A stretch of DNA of 58,772 bases, filler included, from Dugesia japonica (Eukaryota): NCBI GenBank assembly GCA_001938525.1. It is 5 parts of 5 records of this genome, joined end to end, with 100 filler letters (N's around TTAATTAATTAA, not from the genome) between each part and the next. Parts side by side here need not be neighbours in the genome. Positions count along the whole stretch, not along the records: positions 49,810 to 58,772 come from MQRL01626501.1; 4 more parts are not named here. One strand, 5' to 3'. The notes beneath the pieces are model-generated. The model ran no database searches, was not told where the DNA came from, and saw only the letters and a list, made by a program, of their open reading frames with translations. The first letter of the stretch is position 1. The number at the start of each line of letters is the position of its first letter. Position numbers and translations under genes: made by a program. This document shows, one piece after another, positions 49,810-58,772 of this stretch.

Positions 49810-49855
49810 TATTGATAATTTTTAATTCGTTCGATAAACTCATAACTGCTTATAG

Positions 49856-50480
49856 TTATATAACTGTTAATAGTTTAAATTGAAGTTCCTTAATGTTGTT
49901 ATCTATTTCCATAATATGACAATTATAAGTTTGAATTGTGCGTCTGAATACTTGTAGATACTTGCATTTCGATGAAAAAATTGAGAAATCATAAGATGTT
50001 TCATTTGCTGTATTTTCTGATCTATGTAATTGACATTTTAACTTGTAAATGGAAGCTTTAATCATTGCAATATTTGATGAGTCAGAAACTTTTGAATTGA
50101 CCAGGATATAGCTCGGAACTTTATTAAGTAAATTTATTTGCTTGTCGGCGAATGCATGTTCAGTAAGATTTTTGAAAGGAAGAACAGTTGTATAAGACCT
50201 TTGATTTGGATTTGCTTTGATTTTCTCTTCATTTTTAGATTTTTCATTAAGTAGAATACTTATTTTCTTTTGTTTATTGCAATAACTTATTTCGTTATAT
50301 TTGTTAAACGTTTCTTGATCTACTTTATTAAGAGTAAAAGGTAGAGGTTTATTTTTAGCAGATAATTAATTTCACTACAAAGTTTCTTTCGAATAAGAGT
50401 CATCCACTGAAAACTTTGTCGTTTAGACAATTCTTTAAATTGGCGACAATTAAAGGTGTTCTCAAGTTTGTTTTGAATTC
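49856..50480 (-). pseudogene. Probable Penelope-like ORF N-terminal remnant
   Basis: Long frame with FKNLTEHAFADKQINLLNKVPSY, similar to the NLS..LT..E..LL.KG..F motif upstream of PLE RTs. Confidence 0.5.
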
Positions 50481-50699
50481 TTATCCCAAAATTCAAGAGT
50501 TTTCAAAAGTTTTCAAAATATTTTTGAAATTTGGAATATCCTTGGAATCCCAGAAAAATTTCTTTAAACAATTTTAAAAATTTTCATATTATTTAAACAA
50601 CATTCACCCTGATTTTCACAAAGAATTTTAAATTATCTTTTAAATACTTGAACATTTAAACAAAATCGACTTTTATCATGAATTTCCTTAAAATTCAAT

Positions 50700-51872
50700 C
50701 CAAACTGATCAAACCCGAGGAATTGATCACTGAAATTTACCTAAAACTCTCCCTTGTAAATAATTTACCACAACCAGTCAAAAACCATCCAAAACCAACC
50801 ACTGTGAGTAAATAATTGACCAAATNNNNNNNNNNNNNNNNNNNNNNNNNNNNNNNNNNNNNNNNNNNNNNNNNNNNNNNNNNNNNNNNNNNNNNNNNNN
50901 NNNNNNNNNNNNNNNNNNNNNNNNNNNNNNNNNNNNNNNNNNNNNNNNNNNNNNNNNNNNNNNAAAAAAAACAAATGAACCTAATTAATCAATACAGAAG
51001 ATAAAATTGACCGAATCGCCTAAAAAATACCCATAATAACCATTTCCAAGGAAAGATTTAAGCAACATGTTCTAAACCGACCACGTTTGTCCATTCTCAA
51101 TGAAATATTCAACCAAATCGCCTAAATATTACCAATCCCGATAAATATACGATCAAATCGTCCAAAACCGAGCCAAGTTCATCTGAACCAACCAAAAATT
51201 GACAAAATTGTCCAAATATTCCCCAAAACTGACTAATCCTGAAAACATAATTTACCCAAACTTACCTAAACGGAGTAAATGATTGACCAATATTGCCTAA
51301 ACCAGGGAAATATTCGACACAATCATGCAAAATTTCTTCCAATTGATTATTCTCGAGGAAAAATTCAACCAAATCACTCAAAAATTACCCAAATTCACCA
51401 AACACGAGCAAAGTATTGACAAATATTGCCTAGATCCGGAAATATTTGACCAAATCATCCAAAAATAAACCAAAATTCAACTAAGTTAACCTATTACCGA
51501 CCAAGTTTGTCCAGATCTACTTCACCGATGAAAATTTGACCAATATTACCTAAACCGAGTAAATAATTGACCAAATAGTTCAAAACTGACCCAAAATGAC
51601 CAATCTGGAGGAAATAATAGTCCAAATCACCAAATTGATCAAACTCGCGAAAATAATTAACGAATATTGCCTAAACTGAGTAAATAATTGACCAATATTA
51701 CTTAAACCGAGTAAATGATTAATCAATATTGCCTAAACCGGGGAAAGATTCAACCAAATCACCATAAAAATACCCAAACTAACCGATCGCGAGGAAATAT
51801 TTCACCAAATCTTCTAAAAATTACTCTAAACCAATCAAAAATTAACCTTATTCGACGTCACCGAGTAAATAA
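50700..51872. repeat. Degenerate tandem repeat array
   Basis: Recurrent TTGACCAAATATTGCCTAAACCGAGTAAATAA units of about 33 bp. Confidence 0.85.
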
Positions 51873-51914
51873 TGTATGATTATTTAATGGTTTGATAGTA
51901 AGAATAGAGTAAGC

Positions 51915-51937
51915 CAGTGCTACACTATCTACCTACT
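51915..51937 (-). mobile_element. Polinton-like terminus motif
   Basis: Reads AGTAGGTAGATAGTGTAGCAC on the minus strand. Confidence 0.5.
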
Positions 51938-51944
51938 ATTTATT

Positions 51945-52400
51945 ATAATGATCCTATACCTTTGATATATGACCGTCCAGATAAATAAATTACTAGAGAA
52001 AGTTTCACCATAAAAAATCTCAACTCCAGTATTCTTTTGATTTTCCACCTACTACTTAATTTGGAATACATAGCAATTTCTTTATTTTTTTGTTTTTCTA
52101 CAAACTCTTTTAAATATTCCATGACTTTGTATGACCATGATTATTCCTTAATCTTTTTTTCTTGATCATCTTCCTTTTCGAATTCGGCATGGATTCCAAA
52201 TTGTACTTTACAGATTTGAAATTTCTCGACTTCATCCTACACTTTATTTCTGATATGATCAGGCACATAAACACTTTTCATTTCTCACTGTTTCTCCTTA
52301 AACTGGAGACTAATAAAGGCTCCATTGAAATCTGATTTTCTAGCATATTCATCAATAATTGTTCATATTCTTTTTCTCTTCTCCTTTTCCACATTTTCTT
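51945..52400 (-). pseudogene. pPolB N-terminal region, truncated (not in the ORF track)
   Basis: SDFNG...MKSVYVPDHIRNKV*DEVEKFQICKVQFGIHAEFEK...EKIAMYSKLSSRWKIKRILEL aligns by eye to copy 1 SDF...MKELILPDTLVQKLNKIIEEMKVIKIRFGIYVEFLR...EKIVLRSELGSSWTLSRIIEI. Confidence 0.75.
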
Positions 52401-52519
52401 AAAATTATAAAATAATAATGCTAATAATGNNNNNNNNNNNNNNNNNNNNNNNNNNNNNNNNNNNNNNNNNNNNNNNNNNNNNNNNNNNNNNNNNNNNNNN
52501 NNNNNNNNNNNNNNNNNNN

Positions 52520-52587
<68 letters not shown>

Positions 52588-52961
52588 TCCGATTTTGGCA
52601 TTCTTTCCAATTTTCAATCAATAACATTCAAAATTTTCATTTTAGGACCTGGTAAGTAAAGGTTGCGGAAAAGTTGTTCTTTTAGTTCTATATCATTATC
52701 TAACTGTTTCATTGCTTGCCTCATTTTTTTGAGATCACGTTCACTCATATTTTTGATTAGATACATGTGTTTTTGATTTATCAATTTCTACACTGTCTTC
52801 AGTATTTACAATAATCGGCTTATACAACAAGTAGAAATAGTGATTTTTAAATTTCTGATCAGTTGGTTGATGTTCCAATTCATTTTGTTGTTCCTAGTTC
52901 ATTGTGAAGTTGTAAAATAATAAAAGAAATTTCTACATTTATACATAATATTCTTTAATAA

Positions 52962-53441
52962 TTAATTTGAGTCATTTAGACAATGATGTATATATTTTGC
53001 GATTTCTTTGATAATTTTATGATAATCCAATGACTTTAGTACCAAAATCACCACTTTTCCACTGGCTAAAACATTGACACATAATGGCTTATACTTGTTG
53101 ACTCGTAATGCAGGAAATAATTTTGGTTCGAACCAACAATGTAATACACTGTTCATTCTATATAAATTCACTTCCCGTCCAATATCATATGTTATAGTAT
53201 TTGATTGAATACCATCTATTTGGATATTGATATTTTTACAAGTGATTTGTTTATTCATGATTGCTTTTTTGCATCACATGATTCGACAGTTTACAGATTT
53301 AAAAACAATTACTGAATAATTTTTCATTTTTACTACACACTGTCTGTGTTTCTTCCAGGTATTAAATCAAAGATCTAAAAGTGAATCAATTAGATGACCT
53401 CTGTAATTAATATTTGATTTGTTTAGTAATGAATGATCAAT
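52962..53441 (-). pseudogene. Intronless TATA-binding-protein-like gene (both TBP repeats; two in-frame TGA)
   Basis: Repeat 1: SNINYRGHL...QCVVKMKNYSVIVFKSVNCRIM*CKK. Repeat 2: IQSNTITYDIGREVNLYRM..CWFEPKLFPALRVNKYKPLCVNVLASGKVVILVLKS. Compare TBP ALIFSSGKMVCTGAKS and YEPELFPGLIYRM..P....LIFVSGKVVLTGAK. Confidence 0.85.
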
Positions 53442-53484
53442 AATTATAAACTTATATAATCTTTTGAATAAACAAATCATTTCT
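53442..53484. promoter_or_regulatory. Putative bidirectional promoter between the TBP-like and ATPase genes
   Basis: Short divergent spacer with TATAAA (+, 53445) and TATATAAG (-, 53451-53458). Weak evidence in AT-rich DNA. Confidence 0.3.
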
Positions 53485-54057
53485 ATGGTTTCTGTAAAAC
53501 GTTACTTTAAAACAACGCGGTTTTTCAAATAGTCGGTCCTAGTGGAAGTGGAACAAAGTTCAAACATATTTATTGGCATCATGGTAGTGGTGAGTTTGCA
53601 AGTTGAGAAAGATTACGATTATTGATGTATTCGATGATGATTGGTTAAAGAGAATAAATACTAGGGATTTTATTGTAATTGATGACTTGTTTCAAGAGGC
53701 TAATAAGCAGGCTGATTTAAATAATCTGTTAGCAAAACCTGCTCGTCATGGTAATCTAACTGTCGTCTTTATTTCCGAAAATCTTTTCCATCAAGACAGT
53801 ATGCATCGTCTGCGTAATTTAAATGTCAATTATTTAGTTTTATTCAAAGATCCGTGAGATCAAACTGTGTTTGACTATAATTCTCGTCAAGCATTTCCTC
53901 AACATAAAGGATTTTTATCAGATGCATTTAGAGATGTTACTACAAAACTACATGGACATTTATTTATTGATTTTACACAACAATGTCCTGATTTGAACGA
54001 GTAAAAACTGATATATTCAATTTGGAAGAAATAAAAGTTTACAAACCATTGATATAA
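53485..54057 (+). pseudogene. Polinton A32-like packaging ATPase, degenerate
   Basis: VFQIVGPSGSG, FIVIDDLFQEA (Walker B), ARHGNLTVVFISENLF, LNVNYLVLFKDP*DQ, HGHLFIDFTQQCPD, KTDIF. Confidence 0.92.
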
Positions 54058-54114
54058 AGAAAATTAGAACTTAATAAAAGAAATAAGAAATAAAGCGATT
54101 TAAAAAAGTTGCCA

Positions 54115-54400
54115 TAAAACAAGAGGGTGGCGGTGCTGGTAATTTGAGACTATTTTCTCAAAGTATTCCATACTTTAAGGCAATTTTAAGGGCTCCATCA
54201 AATTATCGATAGCAAATTATGCACTCAATGCCGGCATTTGTAATGAATGATGTCATTAGTGATTTGCAACAAATTATTTTGGGCCGAGTCAATATTAGTC
54301 ACAAAAACGGAAAATATCGATTGAAAAAGTATCAAGAAGCTCTTGTAGATATGGAAAAAGCAATAAATTTGGCAGCAAAGAAACGAATATTTGAAAGACA
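54115..54400 (+). pseudogene. Polinton small basic protein that follows the ATPase
   Basis: KQEGGGAG...YFKAIL.A...R.QIM...IILGRVNI...RLKKYQEAL...KKRIF. The QxGG resembles an adenain cleavage site. Confidence 0.6.
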
Positions 54401-54656
54401 TTTTCCCGTACAAAATAAAACAAGAAGAGCAAAAAACAAGTTTATTTTGAATAAAATGGATGGTGAGCATTGGATTTCAATTCATGTCAAATCAAATATT
54501 ATTCTTGTACTTGATCCAATAGGTATGTTTTATTCACCTTTGTTGGTAATAAAACTGGAGCGTATTCAGCAACATGTTGAATACAATCAAATCATGTATC
54601 AGAATCCATTGACATTTCTATGTCGACAATATTGTAATAAACGGCTTAAAAGCTAA
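54400..54656 (+). pseudogene. Adenain-like cysteine protease
   Basis: FILN..GEHWISI (His), LDPIG (Asp), YNQIMYQNPLTFLCRQYC (Gln/Cys). Confidence 0.85.
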
Positions 54657-54769
54657 CATAAACAATGTTATGTGATTATCAATAAAATTTTAAAATTTTG
54701 TGAATTTTATTGATTATGAAGCCTTTCAGAATAGAAATTGGGACTATTTAATTAAAGAATTATGTAAAA

Positions 54770-55067
54770 ATGGATGTGGATAGTATTCTTCAACCGTTTT
54801 ATTACATGTATGCCATGACGGAATCAATGGGTAGCTTATCACAACCTGCTGAAACAACTAATGAGTACTTATAGCGTCATCTCAGGTGGATTGATTTATA
54901 TTGTAAATTTGATCCAATTCAAATTCTCAATGACAATTATAACTTAAATAAACATGTACAATTATGTATACCAGTTAATATTTCCTGTCCATATTAAAAT
55001 CATGGAAATTATTGTGCATACAAAAAATGTTTAAAACTTTGTGTACATTTCCTTTCATCAAGTAAAT
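54770..55067 (+). pseudogene. Small Cys/His-containing orphan ORF before the TIR
   Basis: MDVDSILQPFYYM...SCPY*NHGNYCAYKKCLKLCVHF, with two stops and AATAAA at the end. Confidence 0.4.
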
Positions 55068-55099
55068 AAATATTTTTCCCTTGCTTTTAGTAATTAATT

Positions 55100-55737
55100 C
55101 TAGTATTATTAATAATAATAATTATTTTATTTGGTAACAAAAAAATTATTTGAGGCTAATTATTTTTAATAAAACAAATTTAAAGTTAAGGGTTAAAGTT
55201 CATGCCAAAAGTGTGAAAATTCACACCCATAAAAAAACCATTTTAGTAATAATAATAAAAAATAATGTGTAAAAATTCACACACCGATAAAAAATATAAT
55301 TGTTTACAAAATTCGCACCTATAAGAACATTTTAAATAATATTAATAATAATAATCATTTTATATAGTAATGTATTTTAAATAGTAATGCTCAATGCACA
55401 ACGCTTTTAATTTTAAATTAAAAAATAATGTGAAATATTTATGTTAATTAAAAGAATAAAAAAATTAATTTGAATTTTTAATGCTCAATTCACGTCGCTT
55501 TTAATTTTAAATAAAAAAAAACAAATAATGTGTGAAAAGTTTTTTTGTTAATTAAAACAATACAAAATAATAATTTGAGGTCAATTGAAGTGGGAAATTT
55601 CAGACCTAATATTGTTTATTGTAAAGGTGTGAAAAGTCCTACCTTGGGTGTCAATTTAAATGTTTATATTAAGGTGTGGAATTTTACACATCTAATAATG
55701 TAAAGATCCTGTTCTCGAGTCCACCTAGCTACCTACT
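55100..55737 (-). mobile_element. Right TIR (type A) of the TBP-bearing element
   Basis: Ends AGTAGGTAGCTAG on the minus strand. Homologous to 11174-11390, with internal GTGTGAAAA / TTCACAC repeats. Confidence 0.75.
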
Positions 55738-55867
55738 AACATGCAACTCAATTCAGTGGTAGAAAAGTTTATGTATGAAAATAAACGAAGAAAATATAAA
55801 GAATCTTGAGACTGAAATAATTTTGCATACTTAGCGAAAAGGAATTGATTAAGGCTAAGAGCATAAC

Positions 55868-56030
55868 AGTAGGTAGATAGTAGCGCACGGGCACAATTTG
55901 CACCCCCTCCCTCCTCCAGGGGTCTTGGAAACTACATAATATTGTAGTGATATTTTTGTGCTGGTTTTCTTTCTAAGTTTTTTGGGATGAAAAAATTTGT
56001 GATTGGATCATTTTTTTTGATCGGATCAGT
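55868..56030 (+). mobile_element. Left terminus (type B) of a further Polinton-like element
   Basis: AGTAGGTAGATAGTAGCGCAC, a C-rich patch, then TTTTGGGATGAAAAAATTTGTGATTGG matching the reverse complement of 8675-8700. Confidence 0.7.
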
Positions 56031-57274
56031 ATTTTTATACTGAAAGTGTGTGTGCATTTTTAATTTTAAAAATTTGTGTGTGTTTGTGGTATTAATTGGG
56101 TTAATTTAAAGTAAGTAAAGTTAAGTTGGTGTGTGTGTGCGTGTGAAAGAGGGAATTAGGACTCGAGGGAAGGTTGGAGATCTTTGAAATAATTTTTTGA
56201 AAGTTTGTAAGATTTAGTTGTGGTTGGACAAAATTCTGTCTATAGATTGTCTAAAGGATTTACGGGTTGGATGGATGGTTTGTCCTAGAAGTATGGTAGC
56301 GCAAAAGCACAGGCGTATTAGTTATCGTGGCGTGTTTTTAGAAGGGTGTAAGTTTGTATGGAGTGGTTGGATTATGGTGGTTAATAAGTTTTTTGAAAGG
56401 TAATGTGATGAGGAAGATTCTGCATGTCGATTCTGCTTAAATTTCTGATTGTTTATAGTTGAATTTGATTGGTTGTTGTTTGTAAGTAGTACAAGTGTGT
56501 TAAAAAAGTTTTTGGGAGGAGGAAAAGTATATAGATTGAAAGAAAATTAATTATCAAAATTTATAAGATTTATTTGAAATTTTTTAATCAGGGTGGGTAT
56601 GAGGTATTAATTTTTTGAAAACTTAATTTTTTTTAAAAATGCTGTGTTTTGCTTAAAATGATGAATTAGTTAAAAATAATGGTATTTTGTAAAAATGATG
56701 TGTTTTTGAGTATTTCTTTGTATTTTGGTATCGTAAGGGGTGTGTTTTTATATTTTTAAAGAGGGTAGCCTTGATAATTCTAGGGGAACAATTTTGTTTT
56801 GCGGGAGATTTAAGAAAATATTTTTTGGCGGGAATTTAAAATTTTATTTTTGTTCGTTGGGAAATTAATTATTTTAGAAGACTTTATATGAGATGGGACA
56901 GTCTCTATATTTTACATGGGATGTGGCAGTCTAAAATTTTAAGGCAAGTGAATTTTAGTGTATGTGTGTTACATTTGTGTTGCATCTGAGTTGCAACACT
57001 TTTGCATATATATTGAATACTTAATGCATTCATTAATAAAAAACTATTTACAATAAGAAACATTTGAGACTGATAAGGAAGAAAAAGTAAACATTACTAA
57101 TAAATTGAACATTGACATACCATATCAGAGTCAGGAAATAATAAACATAAAGATAACAAATGTTAAAATAAAAGCTGAGTTCATTGCATTTGATAAACAG
57201 AGACAGTGCCGTGTGGATAGGTAGAAAAATAGTGGTAATATATATTTTTTATTTATGTTAACTTATTAATTATT

Positions 57275-57351
57275 AGATTTCATTAAAATAAGATAAGGCT
57301 TCGATCGAAGGCTTCTTTTGATCGAAGCCTTATCTTATTTTAATGAAATCT
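57275..57351. repeat. Perfect 32-bp inverted repeat with a 13-nt spacer
   Basis: AGATTTCATTAAAATAAGATAAGGCTTCGATC (57275-57306) and its exact reverse complement (57320-57351). Confidence 0.95.
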
Positions 57352-58099
57352 CAAATCCGATCAATGGTTAAGTCCAACAATTATTCNNNNNNNNNNNNNN
57401 NNNNNNNNNNNNNNNNNNNNNNNNNNNNNNNNNNNNTAATTATTAGTTTAGATCCAGAATGCAATGTCAAACAACCACACCAACATCATGTTTCTTGGTT
57501 GTGAAATACTTTATTTTACTGTTAAGTGTTGTACTTTTATGTGTTTTTCAATGTTATATAATAAATCTTATTTAATCAAAGGCTTTTTTTTATTTTAAAC
57601 ATATAGTTTTTAATTAAATCTTTTTAAATTATTGTCTTCAATTGTTGGTAATATTTTATAGTTCAGATACAAAATAATTTCAATCAATATTTTCCAGCAT
57701 TTCTTCTATAATTAGGTCAAAATTCATTATTAATGGACATTTAAATTAATTTTGTTTATATTTAACATGCATGTGTNNNNNNNNNNNNNNNNNTGTGTTA
57801 TAAACAATGGATATTTGCAATAAAAAACTTAATAAATAATAAAAACTAATAAAAAACTTAATAAACAATAAAAAAAACAAATAATTATAACATCTTTTAT
57901 TCATCAATATACAACAATGTACAATTTTGGTCCTAAAGAACACTGGTAATACGTTCACAAATGTTTCTTTTTTAGAATGGTTTCTTTTTGTAGTCATAAT
58001 CTAAATAAAAACAATTAAAATAACATTTACAAACAAATAAATAAATACCGTATGTTTACCAAACTTGATTGAATAAACGGTTTTATGGGGGAAAAACTA

Positions 58100-58772
58100 A
58101 ATAATAATATAGTGACCATATGGGACACTGGGATTTTCTATTAACCCATACCCGCTTATCGTCCGTATTTGTTAATGCTATTTTGGTTGACTTTATGCTG
58201 TAGAGCTGATGGTTTTTTAATTTTAGATCTAAATTGCTCTACTGAGACCGATTTGTTCTCATTATAACAGTCAAGGTAAGACTGATATAAGTTTTCTTCA
58301 ATGTTATGCCTTTTGCTGTCACGCTATTCTTATTATCGAGCAGGCTATAGCATTTCGACCTCTAAAATACCCATTCCTGGTACTTTTGCCCTTTATTTTT
58401 GTCCTTAAATTTCCCGATTAATTAATTTAATTTATTTGAATATAGTGGATGTTATTTACTGTAGTTTGACGTATCTAGGAGCTTATCTTTAAGCATTAAT
58501 TTAGTAAGTTTCTCTAGGCTTATATTATTTATCTCCAAAACAAAACTGTCTGTTTCGCCAGCTACAATATTAATTTTACATTTTTCTTCCTTTCAATATT
58601 TTTCTAACTCTTAATACAGTAGATAGTACATGCGTAGTTTACTCAAGTCCTGGGTTGATCTAAACAGACTATATCCTTATTGAGAAGAACTGCTATCAAA
58701 TCATCATCAATTTTTGTTATTCTCTTAAATACGGATTTTTGATGTTTATGTAATCAGCTTCTTTGCTGAATT
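58100..58772 (-). pseudogene. pPolB C-terminal part, runs off the window (not in the ORF track)
   Basis: NSAKKLIT, DLIAVLLNK..VCLDQP, DLSKLRMY, IVAGETDSF, LLDTSNY, IGKFKD, RSKCYS, AKGI, KIALTNTDDKRVW, PYGH. Confidence 0.9.

What the first reader, a model, noticed from the sequence alone, without database searches (positions are those of the whole stretch)
51945..55737. Polinton/adintovirus-like element carrying its own TATA-binding protein homolog
Seen on one contig piece: [pPolB N-terminus] <- [short decayed ORF] <- [TBP-like] | [packaging ATPase] -> [basic protein] -> [adenain] -> [orphan] -> TIR. The TBP-like gene is intronless, ~160 codons, core-only and has both saddle repeats. It is far more divergent than cellular TBP/TRF2, lies head-to-head ~45 bp from the ATPase, and carries in-frame stops like its neighbours. 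Established: the Polinton core is pPolB, integrase, ATPase, protease and capsids, with reliance on host transcription, and viral TBP homologs are mainly known from large nucleocytoviruses. Inference: a small dsDNA virus-like element with a captured basal transcription factor that could redirect host Pol II/III to its promoters, act as a late-gene switch or TBP decoy, or bend AT-rich origin DNA. I am not aware of this as a described Polinton module, but I could not search.
Basis: partly seen in the sequence, partly recalled or inferred. Interest (0 to 1): 0.92.

Follow-up and report, generated by a model that had tools for sequence, protein, structure and literature searches.

The report
Decayed Polinton-like element with TBP-like gene
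This is a broken, partly deleted copy of a Polinton-type virus-like mobile element that once carried a shortened TATA-binding protein; intact relatives in environmental metagenomes nearly always keep that gene next to their packaging genes, whose promoters share a TATA-like motif, which suggests these small DNA elements bring their own transcription starter.

Summary
A minus-strand frame at about 52962-53423 is a TBP-fold pseudogene. Its 103-aa stop-free piece passes Pfam TBP (E 4e-6), and its model matches only TBPs in the PDB. Intact 148-153-aa relatives align to it in one frame (E 2e-32). It lies head-to-head with a decayed A32-type packaging ATPase. Downstream come a basic-protein remnant joined to an adenain remnant and a conserved 160-aa gene. 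Beyond the TBP-like gene lies a pPolB N-terminal fragment. Every gene is broken, and one deletion removed the integrase-capsid block, so the copy is dead.

The gene is not a one-off host retrocopy. It belongs to a large metagenomic family: 149 clusters at 50% identity and 138 JGI loci. Eighteen of 20 loci of 5 kb or more carry Polinton core genes. The family is about 150 aa, a TBP saddle whose first repeat lacks helix 2.

In relatives, virion-module genes share a [T/C]ATAAACA motif 40-50 nt upstream (46 of 73), and the TBP-like gene lacks it (1 of 48). My inference is an element-encoded initiation factor for those promoters.

No animal or adintovirus link was found. Starrett et al. 2021 already label "TBP" on MELD virus maps, so the novelty is moderate. 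The TIR and the "short decayed ORF" were not confirmed.

The parts
51913..51940 (.). Left arm of a 28-nt imperfect inverted repeat (partner at 55865-55892). It abuts the truncated pPolB fragment. Meaning unknown.
   Evidence: the repeat finder pair I3, 82% complementary. A 14-nt exact core was seen again by blastn.
51946..52254 (-). N-terminal fragment of a protein-primed family-B DNA polymerase (pPolB), about the first 100 codons. It is cut off at its 3' side and carries 1 in-frame stop.
   Evidence: tblastn of L033 pPolB residues 16-103, E 1.8e-7. Pairwise BLASTP 35% identity over 57 aa, E 3e-10. Stop count. The same protein family has Pfam DNA_pol_B_2 in L067, L091 and L092.
52255..52961 (.). 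Unassigned stretch between pPolB and the TBP-like gene.
   Evidence: No Pfam hit. No match to any gene of the relatives. Microsatellite.
52962..53423 (-). TBP-like pseudogene. It has a truncated first repeat plus a full second repeat, 2 in-frame stops, no frameshift, and no start codon where the relatives start.
   Evidence: Pfam PF00352 above the gathering score. PDB hits are TBPs only. One-frame alignment to residues 3-144 of relatives, E 2e-32. Break counts. It keeps 16 of 21 family-conserved columns. The AF2 model of the 103-aa piece has pLDDT 90, and its top 44 Foldseek PDB matches are all TBPs.
53424..53498 (.). Divergent spacer between the TBP-like gene and the ATPase gene. It holds one copy of the clade's promoter motif at 53468-53474, pointing toward the ATPase.
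   Evidence: Bounds come from the alignments. Motif position. Motif statistics in relatives.
53499..54054 (+). Pseudogene of an A32/FtsK-type genome-packaging ATPase, with 2 in-frame stops and 2 frameshifts.
   Evidence: tblastn with relatives' 208-216-aa ATPases: 51-57% identity, E to 3e-52, HSPs in 3 frames. The window piece has a weak Pox_A32 hit, E 0.042. Relatives carry faint Pox_A32 hits.
54135..54656 (+). The 5' remnant of a small basic-protein gene (the roughly 104-aa family) runs directly into the 3' remnant of the adenain-like cysteine protease gene. One internal deletion removed the genes that lie between them in relatives: integrase, a 346-aa protein, a 103-aa protein and a roughly 410-aa capsid-like protein. 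There is 1 in-frame stop in the first remnant.
   Evidence: Two sets of tblastn alignments cover this span. The 101-108-aa proteins align over their residues 3-84. The Peptidase_C5-type proteins align over their residues 30-108 only. L002's protease passes Pfam Peptidase_C5, E 1.8e-6, and L002's 104-aa protein has a weak Adeno_PX hit. Gene order in relatives.
54658..54664 (+). Second copy of the promoter motif, in front of the next gene.
54716..55066 (+).
   Evidence: tblastn E 3.8e-10, about 26% identity, covering relatives' residues 1-160. No Pfam family.
55067..55864 (.). It is not verified as a terminus.
   Evidence: the repeat finder families D5, D6, D9 and D10. No inverted partner elsewhere on the piece.
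55865..55892 (.). Right arm of the 28-nt inverted repeat.
   Evidence: pair I3.
58103..58772 (-). C-terminal fragment of a pPolB gene, about 220 codons, running off the end of the piece. It has 6 in-frame stops and at least 1 frameshift. It belongs either to the same element (the convergent pPolB layout of L015, L033, L091 and L092) or to a neighbouring copy.
   Evidence: tblastn E 5e-34, 42-47% identity to L033 and L015 pPolB. Break counts. Layout of relatives.

Best explanation
SHOWN. The region is a dead, internally deleted fragment of a Polinton-like (MELD-virus-like) element integrated in an AT-rich, repeat-rich eukaryotic scaffold. Its order is: pPolB N-terminus (minus strand), an unassigned stretch with the gap, the TBP-like gene (minus strand), then head-to-head the packaging ATPase, a basic-protein remnant fused to a protease remnant, and a 160-aa gene (all plus strand). 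A further pPolB C-terminal fragment lies 3 kb to the right. The TBP-like gene belongs to a large, previously uncharacterised metagenomic family of roughly 150-aa proteins. These fold as a TBP saddle whose first repeat is shortened and lacks helix 2, while the second repeat is complete. The C-terminal stirrup E-P-E-x-F-P and the two DNA-inserting Phe positions of repeat 2 are nearly invariant. In relatives the gene is almost always part of a Polinton-type gene set, most often immediately upstream of the ATPase.

INFERRED. In live relatives the protein is an element-encoded transcription initiation factor. It would be made from a promoter of a different class. It would bind the TATA-like [T/C]ATAAACA box that sits about 40-50 nt before the start codons of the ATPase, basic-protein, penton-like, capsid-like and integrase genes. 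Through its conserved stirrup it would recruit the host TFIIB and Pol II machinery, acting as an early-to-late switch. This is analogous to the TBP-fold late-gene activators of beta- and gamma-herpesviruses and to the TBP homologues of giant viruses. In this window the gene and all its neighbours are broken, so nothing here is functional.

CONFIDENCE. The figure given is for the whole statement, mechanism included. For the identity part alone I would put it at about 0.95.
For: IDENTITY.
- Pfam TBP above threshold for the window's piece and for 41 of 41 relatives.
- PDB sequence hits are TBPs only.
- The AF2 model of relative P0004 has pLDDT 96.9. Its top 44 Foldseek matches are all TBPs, query-normalised TM-score 0.67-0.77.
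- The window's own piece gives pLDDT 90 and TBP-only top matches.

FAMILY AND LINKAGE.
- 149 representative clusters with E<=1e-3.
- 1672 clusters at 90% identity with E<=1e-5.
- 138 JGI loci.
- 18 of 20 loci of 5 kb or more, and 15 of 21 loci of 3-5 kb, carry at least one core Polinton gene.
- Gene tables show rve, Peptidase_C5, Pox_A32 and DNA_pol_B_2.
- The TBP-like gene lies just upstream of the ATPase in 28 of 36 loci and head-to-head with it in 5 of 36.

DECAY.
- 8 in-frame stops of all three kinds, facing varied residues in relatives, plus frameshifts, a deletion and truncations.

MECHANISM.
- ATAAACA occurs in sense in 46 of 73 non-redundant upstream regions, against 3 of 73 antisense and 1 of 73 in coding sequence. 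The median for 7-mers of the same composition is 2 of 73.
- By gene: ATPase 12/13, p104 9/10, p103 6/6, p346 4/4, p409 8/8, TBP 1/17, and TBP 1/48 over all loci.
- The motif is present in the window's TBP|ATPase spacer.
- Their roles in TFIIB contact and DNA kinking are established knowledge of TBP structures such as 1ais and 1vol.
Against: - No expression or binding data exist, so the factor-promoter pairing is only a correlation within loci that were all selected for having the TBP-like gene.
- The motif contains a canonical TATAAA, so host TBP alone could serve it.
- The first repeat keeps only one of its two Phe positions and has a reduced stirrup, so DNA binding may differ from that of TBP.
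- The start codons used for the distance statistics are first-ATG calls of my own.
- The host is unknown.
- The termini of the window's element are undefined.
- The relation between the two pPolB fragments is unresolved.
Confidence: 0.6

Rival explanations
1. The TBP-like protein is a decoy rather than an activator. It occupies TATA boxes or titrates TFIIB-type partners to shut down or re-programme host transcription. The loss of helix 2 of repeat 1 would help it escape host regulators that grip the convex side of TBP.
For: - The stirrup motif is conserved while the first repeat is truncated.
- The gene has its own promoter class.
Against: - The shared motif sits in front of the element's own virion genes at a fixed distance and in a fixed orientation. 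That is what an activator's site looks like.
- A decoy would not need cognate sites in the element.
Confidence: 0.2
2. The TBP fold is used for an architectural, non-transcriptional job. It would bend or mark AT-rich DNA for protein-primed replication or for genome packaging, which would explain why it lies next to the packaging ATPase.
For: - The gene is adjacent to the ATPase in 33 of 36 loci.
- It lies between the replication and morphogenesis modules.
Against: - It lacks the promoter motif shared by the packaging and capsid genes, so it is not co-regulated with them.
- The residues that are nearly invariant are those of the TFIIB-contacting stirrup.
Confidence: 0.12
3. It is a one-off retrocopy of the host's TBP or TRF2 that landed by chance beside a Polinton fragment.
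For: - The gene is intronless and has decayed like a processed pseudogene.
Against: - The best relatives are about 150-aa proteins encoded inside Polinton-type gene sets on dozens of independent contigs.
- Canonical two-repeat TBPs appear only at E>=1e-5.
- Flanking genes are syntenic with those relatives.
Confidence: 0.01
4. It is a chance open frame in AT-rich DNA with a spurious TBP resemblance.
For: - The DNA is 28% GC, and short ORFs are common there.
Against: - Pfam score above the gathering threshold.
- tblastn E 2e-32 over 142 residues.
- Fold matches to TBPs only.
Confidence: 0.01

Closest known systems
Polintons/Mavericks and Polinton-like (MELD) viruses, including the MELD virus maps of Starrett et al. 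2021 (PMC8502044, Fig. 5) that label a 'TBP' and a 'TRAF' gene
   Same: - The gene set matches: pPolB, rve integrase (in relatives), A32-type ATPase, adenain-like protease and a roughly 410-aa capsid-like protein.
- Relative L001 even has MATH/TRAF genes beside the TBP-like gene, as in that figure legend.
   Different: - The paper only labels the gene.
- It does not describe the recurrence of the gene, its truncated first repeat, its position next to the ATPase or the shared promoter motif.
- I did not fetch the paper's records, so I cannot say whether its TBP belongs to this family.
- The window's copy lacks the integrase and capsid genes, and no TIR or TSD could be defined.
TBP homologues of nucleocytoviruses (mimivirus-type, phycodnavirus, marseillevirus, asfarvirus B263R-type)
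   Same: - They are virus-encoded TBP-fold proteins. Foldseek against the viral library returns them with probability 1.00.
   Different: - They are longer (about 190-500 aa).
- They are only 9-17% identical to the model, against 21-26% for cellular and archaeal TBPs.
- They occur in viruses that also encode their own RNA polymerase. These 15-22-kb elements encode none.
Herpesvirus late-gene TBP mimics (BcRF1, ORF24, UL87 family)
   Same: - The proposed logic is the same: a viral TBP-fold protein recognises a non-canonical TATA-type box in front of late (virion) genes and brings in host Pol II (established knowledge).
- They appear as weak fold matches: E 0.03-0.05, probability 0.87-0.92.
   Different: - They are large multidomain proteins with no detectable sequence relationship to this family.
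- They belong to unrelated viruses.
Cellular and archaeal TBP, and the paralogue TRF2/TBPL1
   Same: - The fold and the repeat-2 signature columns are shared.
- Pfam PF00352 is matched.
   Different: - This family is about 150 aa instead of about 180.
- Repeat 1 lacks helix 2, has a shorter stirrup, and is not detected by the Pfam model.
- The family is about equally distant from archaeal and eukaryotic TBPs.
- It is encoded in mobile elements.

Membership tests
TBP (Pfam PF00352) fold family | Sequence match to the TBP repeat model above the curated threshold | tested here: met
   Window piece: 26.9 bits against a cutoff of 22.9, E 4.2e-6. All 41 of 41 relatives match.
TBP (Pfam PF00352) fold family | Two tandem repeats forming a saddle (S1-H1-S2-S3-S4-S5-H2, twice) | tested here: inconclusive
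   The model of intact relative P0004 aligns over the whole TBP core, query-normalised TM-score 0.67-0.77. Repeat 1 has only 4 strands and 1 short helix and no helix 2. In the window both halves are present in one frame but are interrupted by 2 stops.
TBP (Pfam PF00352) fold family | Paired DNA-inserting Phe residues in each repeat | tested here: inconclusive
   In repeat 2 both positions are conserved in the family: one is invariant and the other is at least 90% conserved (aligned to solved TBPs). In repeat 1 only one conserved Phe column is seen. In the window's copy 4 of 21 conserved columns are changed.
TBP (Pfam PF00352) fold family | Binding of TATA DNA and of TFIIB-type factors | not testable with these tools
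   Only indirect evidence is available: the conserved stirrup columns and the TATA-like motif upstream of neighbouring genes.
Polinton/Maverick | Protein-primed family-B DNA polymerase | tested here: met
   The window holds two fragments, 51946-52254 and 58103-58772. Intact homologues carry Pfam DNA_pol_B_2.
Polinton/Maverick | Retrovirus-like (rve) integrase | tested here: not met
   The integrase is absent from the window because it lies in the deleted block. It is present in relatives.
Polinton/Maverick | FtsK/A32-type packaging ATPase and adenain-like protease | tested here: met
   The ATPase is a pseudogene, E 3e-52 to relatives. The protease is only a 3' remnant, E 2e-12 to a protein that passes Peptidase_C5.
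Polinton/Maverick | Double jelly-roll major capsid protein and penton protein | tested here: inconclusive
   Both are absent from the window. Relatives have roughly 410-aa and roughly 346-aa proteins in the expected places. The only family signal is a weak Capsid_N hit, E 0.007.
Polinton/Maverick | Terminal inverted repeats with a 6-bp target-site duplication | tested here: not met
   No long inverted repeat was found on the piece. The only candidate is a 28-nt, 82% inverted pair, and it has no flanking duplication. The piece may not contain both ends.
Adintoviruses (animal-tropic) | Animal host, and adenovirus-like virion genes together with the integrase | not tested
The host is unknown. All relatives are anonymous metagenome or SRA contigs. 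I do not file the element here.

The most novel reading that the evidence does not exclude
A whole clade of 15-22-kb Polinton-like elements may run a self-contained two-step transcription programme. A truncated TBP paralogue lacks the helix that host regulators grip. It would be expressed from a motif-less promoter and then switch on the virion module through a dedicated [T/C]ATAAACA box. That would make these the smallest known eukaryotic DNA elements that bring their own general transcription factor. The factor would have been acquired independently of the giant-virus TBPs, because the family is closer to cellular and archaeal TBPs than to those.
Probability: 0.35. Interest if true: 0.75.

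Novelty: new variant of a known kind. Interest (0 to 1): 0.55.

Why it matters
Polintons are thought to depend wholly on host transcription. Virus-encoded TBPs are known mainly from giant viruses that also carry their own polymerase.

This work shows that a short TBP variant is a standard part of a widespread clade of Polinton-like elements. The clade is seen only in metagenomes and is missing from IMG/VR and from named protein databases. The variant travels with a shared, oriented TATA-like motif in front of the virion genes. That gives a concrete hypothesis for how such elements time their late genes, testable with descriptive evidence alone.

It also adds a data point on how often basal transcription factors are captured by viruses. 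For genome annotation, the family offers a cheap marker. IMG currently names these proteins as ordinary cellular TBP, so they can be mistaken for host genes.

The copy in this window is only a fossil.

Tried and rejected
- **Word-indexed protein search** with the 103-aa piece found nothing. The exhaustive search was needed.
- **PHROGs** gave no useful hit.
- **Pfam and PDB sequence searches** of the 145-aa fused ORF alone found no protease family. The protease was identified only through relatives.
- **IMG/VR scans** with the TBP alignment and with an ATPase alignment returned no relatives. A planned comparison with TBP-less sister elements therefore could not be made.
- **Long-TIR idea.** The mirrored GC skew of the flanks suggested it, but the flanks share no sequence.
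- **Alternative genetic code** as the reason for the in-frame stops was rejected. All three stop codons occur, they face varied residues in relatives, and there are frameshifts and a deletion as well.
- **The 3.6-kb gene-free stretch of L001** as a hidden pPolB: no long frame under any code that keeps a stop codon.
- **Genes downstream of the TBP-like gene in relatives** were compared with window 52255-52961 and gave no match.
- **Rfam and tRNA scans** of the piece found nothing.
- **Literature searches** for the sample and assembly identifiers found nothing.
- **Not attempted.** I did not query the TBP-like frame as one string, because the tools refuse read-through by reference. I searched its pieces apart and let intact relatives align to the DNA instead.

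Full report
**Scope and the gap**

I worked only on 49810-58772. That piece is 8963 nt, 28% GC, and has four N runs. The N run named in the finding (52430-52519) lies inside a TAA-type microsatellite. A perfect (TAA)22.7 array abuts it on the right at 52520-52587, and imperfect TAA-type units abut it on the left. No homology-supported frame crosses it. The ORFs that the ORF listing draws across it consist of N and microsatellite codons. Continuity and frame across the gap therefore cannot be known.

The TBP-like gene, the ATPase and everything to their right lie wholly on one side of the gap and do not depend on it. Only the adjacency of the pPolB N-terminal fragment to the TBP-like gene rests on the scaffold join.

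**Is there a TBP-like gene?**

Yes.
- Its 3' stop-free piece (103 aa) matches Pfam TBP above the gathering score: E 4.2e-6, 26.9 bits against 22.9, profile positions 4-82 of 85.
- In the PDB by sequence it matches TBPs almost exclusively. Archaeal TBPs score best at E about 3e-6, followed by microsporidian, yeast, plant and human TBPs.
- The two short upstream pieces have no Pfam hit of their own.
- Intact relatives of 148-153 aa align to the DNA in a single frame over their residues 3-144. This covers window 52983-53417 with E 2e-32 and 42% identity. Both halves of the gene are therefore present.
- An AlphaFold2 model of the window's own 103-aa piece, built with the relatives as alignment, has pLDDT 90.1. 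Its 44 best Foldseek matches in the PDB are all TBPs.

**What family is it?**

An exhaustive phmmer search of 1.84 billion representatives returned 149 proteins at E<=1e-3. Of these, 35 had E<=1e-10, and the best had E 3e-17 at about 50% identity. Most are 140-180 aa, and the query aligns to their C-terminal halves.

A profile search of the 90%-identity clusters found 1672 proteins at E<=1e-5. The top 120 come only from JGI, ENA and Logan assemblies, and none carries an NCBI or UniRef name. IMG calls some of them ordinary "TATA-box binding protein". Canonical TBPs, about 180 aa with two matched stretches, appear only from E about 1e-5 downward. One such cluster is a Marsarchaeota MAG TBP.

All 41 aligned members pass Pfam TBP, each with a single matched repeat.

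The model of intact member P0004 is very confident: pLDDT 96.9, pTM 0.86.
- Its second half has the full strand-helix-four strands-helix order of a TBP repeat.
- Its first half has one short helix and four strands and no terminal helix.
- Even so, it superposes on whole TBP cores. The query-normalised TM-score is 0.67-0.77 and the probability 1.00, and all 44 matches with E<=1e-3 are TBPs, at 21-26% identity.
- In the viral structure library it matches giant-virus TBP homologues at 9-17% identity. Far down the list it also matches herpesvirus BcRF1- and UL87-type proteins.

The conserved columns of the family include an invariant Phe and an E-P-E-x-F-P stretch in repeat 2, plus a second Phe that is at least 90% conserved. 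In alignments to solved TBPs these fall on the C-terminal stirrup and the DNA-inserting Phe positions. The functional meaning of those positions is established knowledge of TBP/TFIIB/DNA structures and was not tested here.

**Is the gene linked to Polinton genes elsewhere?**

Yes, consistently. Contigs encoding relatives show the TBP-like gene together with several Polinton-type genes:
- an ATPase with faint Pox_A32 similarity;
- an rve integrase, sometimes with a weak chromodomain hit;
- a Peptidase_C5 protease;
- proteins of about 346 and 410 aa in the capsid positions;
- a large protein with DNA_pol_B_2.

A scan of JGI metagenomes found 138 loci, of which 80 were kept. Of the loci of 5 kb or more, 18 of 20 hold at least one core Polinton gene. 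Of those of 3-5 kb, 15 of 21 do.

The commonest order is: TBP-like, one to three small genes, ATPase, about 104 aa, integrase, about 346 aa, about 103 aa, about 410 aa, protease, about 160 aa. The pPolB lies either upstream on the same strand or convergent at the far end. Among 36 loci holding both genes:
- in 28 the TBP-like gene lies just upstream of the ATPase on the same strand, at a median distance of 406 nt;
- in 5 it is head-to-head with the ATPase, as in the window;
- in 2 it is far downstream;
- in 1 it is convergent.

Neither the TBP alignment nor an ATPase alignment found any relative in IMG/VR.

**Anatomy of the window's copy, using relatives as guides**

- **pPolB N-terminus.** 51946-52254, minus strand: about the first 100 codons of pPolB. 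tblastn E 1.8e-7 and pairwise E 3e-10. It has 1 in-frame stop and is then cut off.
- **Unassigned stretch.** 52255-52961: nothing recognisable, plus the gap.
- **TBP-like gene.** 52962-53423, minus strand. It has 2 in-frame stops, no frameshift and no ATG where relatives start. It keeps 16 of 21 family-conserved columns; 4 are changed and 1 is a stop.
- **ATPase.** 53499-54054, plus strand. It is 51-57% identical to relatives (E 3e-52), with 2 stops and 2 frameshifts.
- **Fused remnants.** 54135-54656, plus strand. The front of the roughly 104-aa basic-protein gene runs straight into the back of the protease gene. In a relative the basic protein has a weak Adeno_PX-like tail. The relatives' protease matches only from about its residue 30 onward. 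One deletion therefore removed the integrase, the capsid-position genes and the small gene between them. ORF 54219-54656, which looks intact, is this fusion.
- **160-aa gene.** 54716-55066, plus strand: the conserved gene of about 160 aa, with 3-4 stops.
- **pPolB C-terminus.** 58103-58772, minus strand: a pPolB C-terminal fragment with E 5e-34, 6 stops and at least one frameshift. It runs off the piece.

The aligned stretches of the central block (the TBP-like gene through the 160-aa gene) hold 8 distinct in-frame stops. They use all three stop codons and face varied residues in relatives. This rules out a reassigned genetic code. The element is dead.

**What I could not settle about the element**

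No terminal inverted repeat could be defined. The mirrored GC skew of the flanks is not matched by sequence similarity. A 28-nt, 82% inverted pair at 51913-51940 and 55865-55892 frames the coding block, and its left arm abuts the truncated pPolB fragment. I cannot explain it.

The right-hand pPolB fragment fits the convergent layout of L015, L033, L091 and L092. The left-hand N-terminal fragment then implies either a second copy or a rearrangement. The right fragment is more heavily decayed, which suggests different histories. This is unresolved.

**A promoter motif in the relatives**

I took 120 nt upstream of genes in intact relatives whose start agrees with a homologue's start. This gave 73 non-redundant regions from 20 loci. 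The 7-mer ATAAACA is by far the most enriched word: 53 occurrences against 4 expected, z = 24.
- It occurs in sense in 46 of 73 regions, antisense in 3 of 73, and in the first coding 120 nt of the same genes in 1 of 73.
- The median for 7-mers of the same composition is 2 of 73.
- Its context is T or C before it and mostly A after it. Its first base peaks 40-50 nt before the start codon.
- By gene: ATPase 12/13, 104-aa gene 9/10, 103-aa gene 6/6, 346-aa gene 4/4, 410-aa gene 8/8, integrase 6/11, protease 0/3, TBP-like gene 1/17.
- Over all loci, only 1 of 48 non-redundant TBP-like upstream regions has it, and no comparably strong word replaces it.

In the window the motif survives in the TBP|ATPase spacer at 53468-53474, pointing at the ATPase. 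This is about 30 nt before the point where relatives' ATPases begin to align. It also survives at 54658-54664, before the 160-aa gene. The block holds 5 copies against 1.8 expected, and 21 of 500 shuffles reach that number.

**Interpretation**

Shown:
- a TBP-fold gene family that is a regular part of a clade of Polinton-like elements;
- a dead member of that family in this window;
- a shared, oriented TATA-like box in front of the virion-module genes and not in front of the TBP-like gene.

Inferred: the protein is the element's own initiation factor for those boxes. It would use its conserved stirrup to engage host TFIIB-type factors and Pol II, and it would be expressed from a different promoter class, giving an early-to-late switch.

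The nearest functional analogues are the herpesvirus TBP-fold late-gene activators and the giant-virus TBP homologues. The nearest relatives by sequence and fold are cellular and archaeal TBPs, and the family is about equally distant from both.

Rivals that remain open are a decoy that interferes with host transcription and an architectural role in replication or packaging. A host retrocopy and a chance ORF are excluded.

**Novelty**

Full-text searches combined Polinton, Polinton-like, Maverick and adintovirus with TBP or TATA-binding terms. Only one source mentions such a gene. Starrett et al. [quoted passage not shown] Relative L001 likewise has MATH/TRAF genes beside the TBP-like gene.

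The bare fact is therefore already in print. In that library I found no description of the recurrence, the truncated architecture, the fixed neighbourhood or the motif. Papers outside the library were not searched.

- I fetched no named virus and none of the accessions listed in the adintovirus paper.
- The contigs I looked up or scanned for are anonymous metagenome or SRA contigs found with the finding's own protein family. Their hosts are unknown and nothing marks them as animal viruses. If the operators read the bar more widely, those are the calls concerned.
Queries were stop-free pieces or intact natural relatives.

Noticed in passing
window 58103-58772 (-): A pPolB C-terminal fragment of about 220 codons runs off the end of the piece. 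It has 6 in-frame stops and at least 1 frameshift. The Polinton-like sequence therefore extends well beyond the finding's right border at 55737.
   Followed up: partly
window 51913-51940 and 55865-55892: A 28-nt, 82% inverted repeat frames the coding block, and its left arm abuts the truncated pPolB fragment. It could mark a rearrangement, another element's ends, or chance.
   Followed up: partly
window 50750-51880 and 55800-57000: The left flank is a degenerate tandem array of roughly 31-nt units and is C-rich on the plus strand. The right flank is strongly G-rich (GC skew up to +0.69). The skews mirror each other, but the sequences share no similarity.
   Followed up: partly
window 57275-57351: A 35-nt, 97% complementary hairpin with a 7-nt loop.
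   Followed up: no
L015, L033, L027, L071, L078 and 15 further loci (upstream regions): An oriented [T/C]ATAAACA motif lies about 40-50 nt upstream of virion-module genes (46 of 73 regions). It is almost never upstream of the TBP-like gene (1 of 48).
   Followed up: yes
L001:854-1858 and L001:5476-6447: Two MATH/TRAF-domain genes lie beside the TBP-like gene. This echoes the 'TRAF' and 'TBP' labels in the MELD virus figure legend of Starrett et al. 2021.
   Followed up: no
L033:9125-12391 (-), L067:1840-6597 (+): The pPolB of this clade carries an Endonuclease VII-like stretch in front of the polymerase domain (E 8e-5 and 8e-4, just under the Pfam cutoff). L067 also has an N-terminal C2H2-type zinc-finger hit.
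   Followed up: no
L044:1918-3327 (+): A 470-aa leucine-rich-repeat protein is encoded two genes downstream of the TBP-like gene in one relative.
   Followed up: no
family-wide: The clade is absent from IMG/VR, for both the TBP-like and the ATPase queries. It is also absent from NCBI- or UniRef-named proteins among the top 120 hits. IMG annotates members as ordinary cellular TBP.
   Followed up: partly
L001:1858-5476: A 3.6-kb stretch has no called gene and no long open frame under the standard code. It sits inside an otherwise gene-dense element contig.
   Followed up: partly
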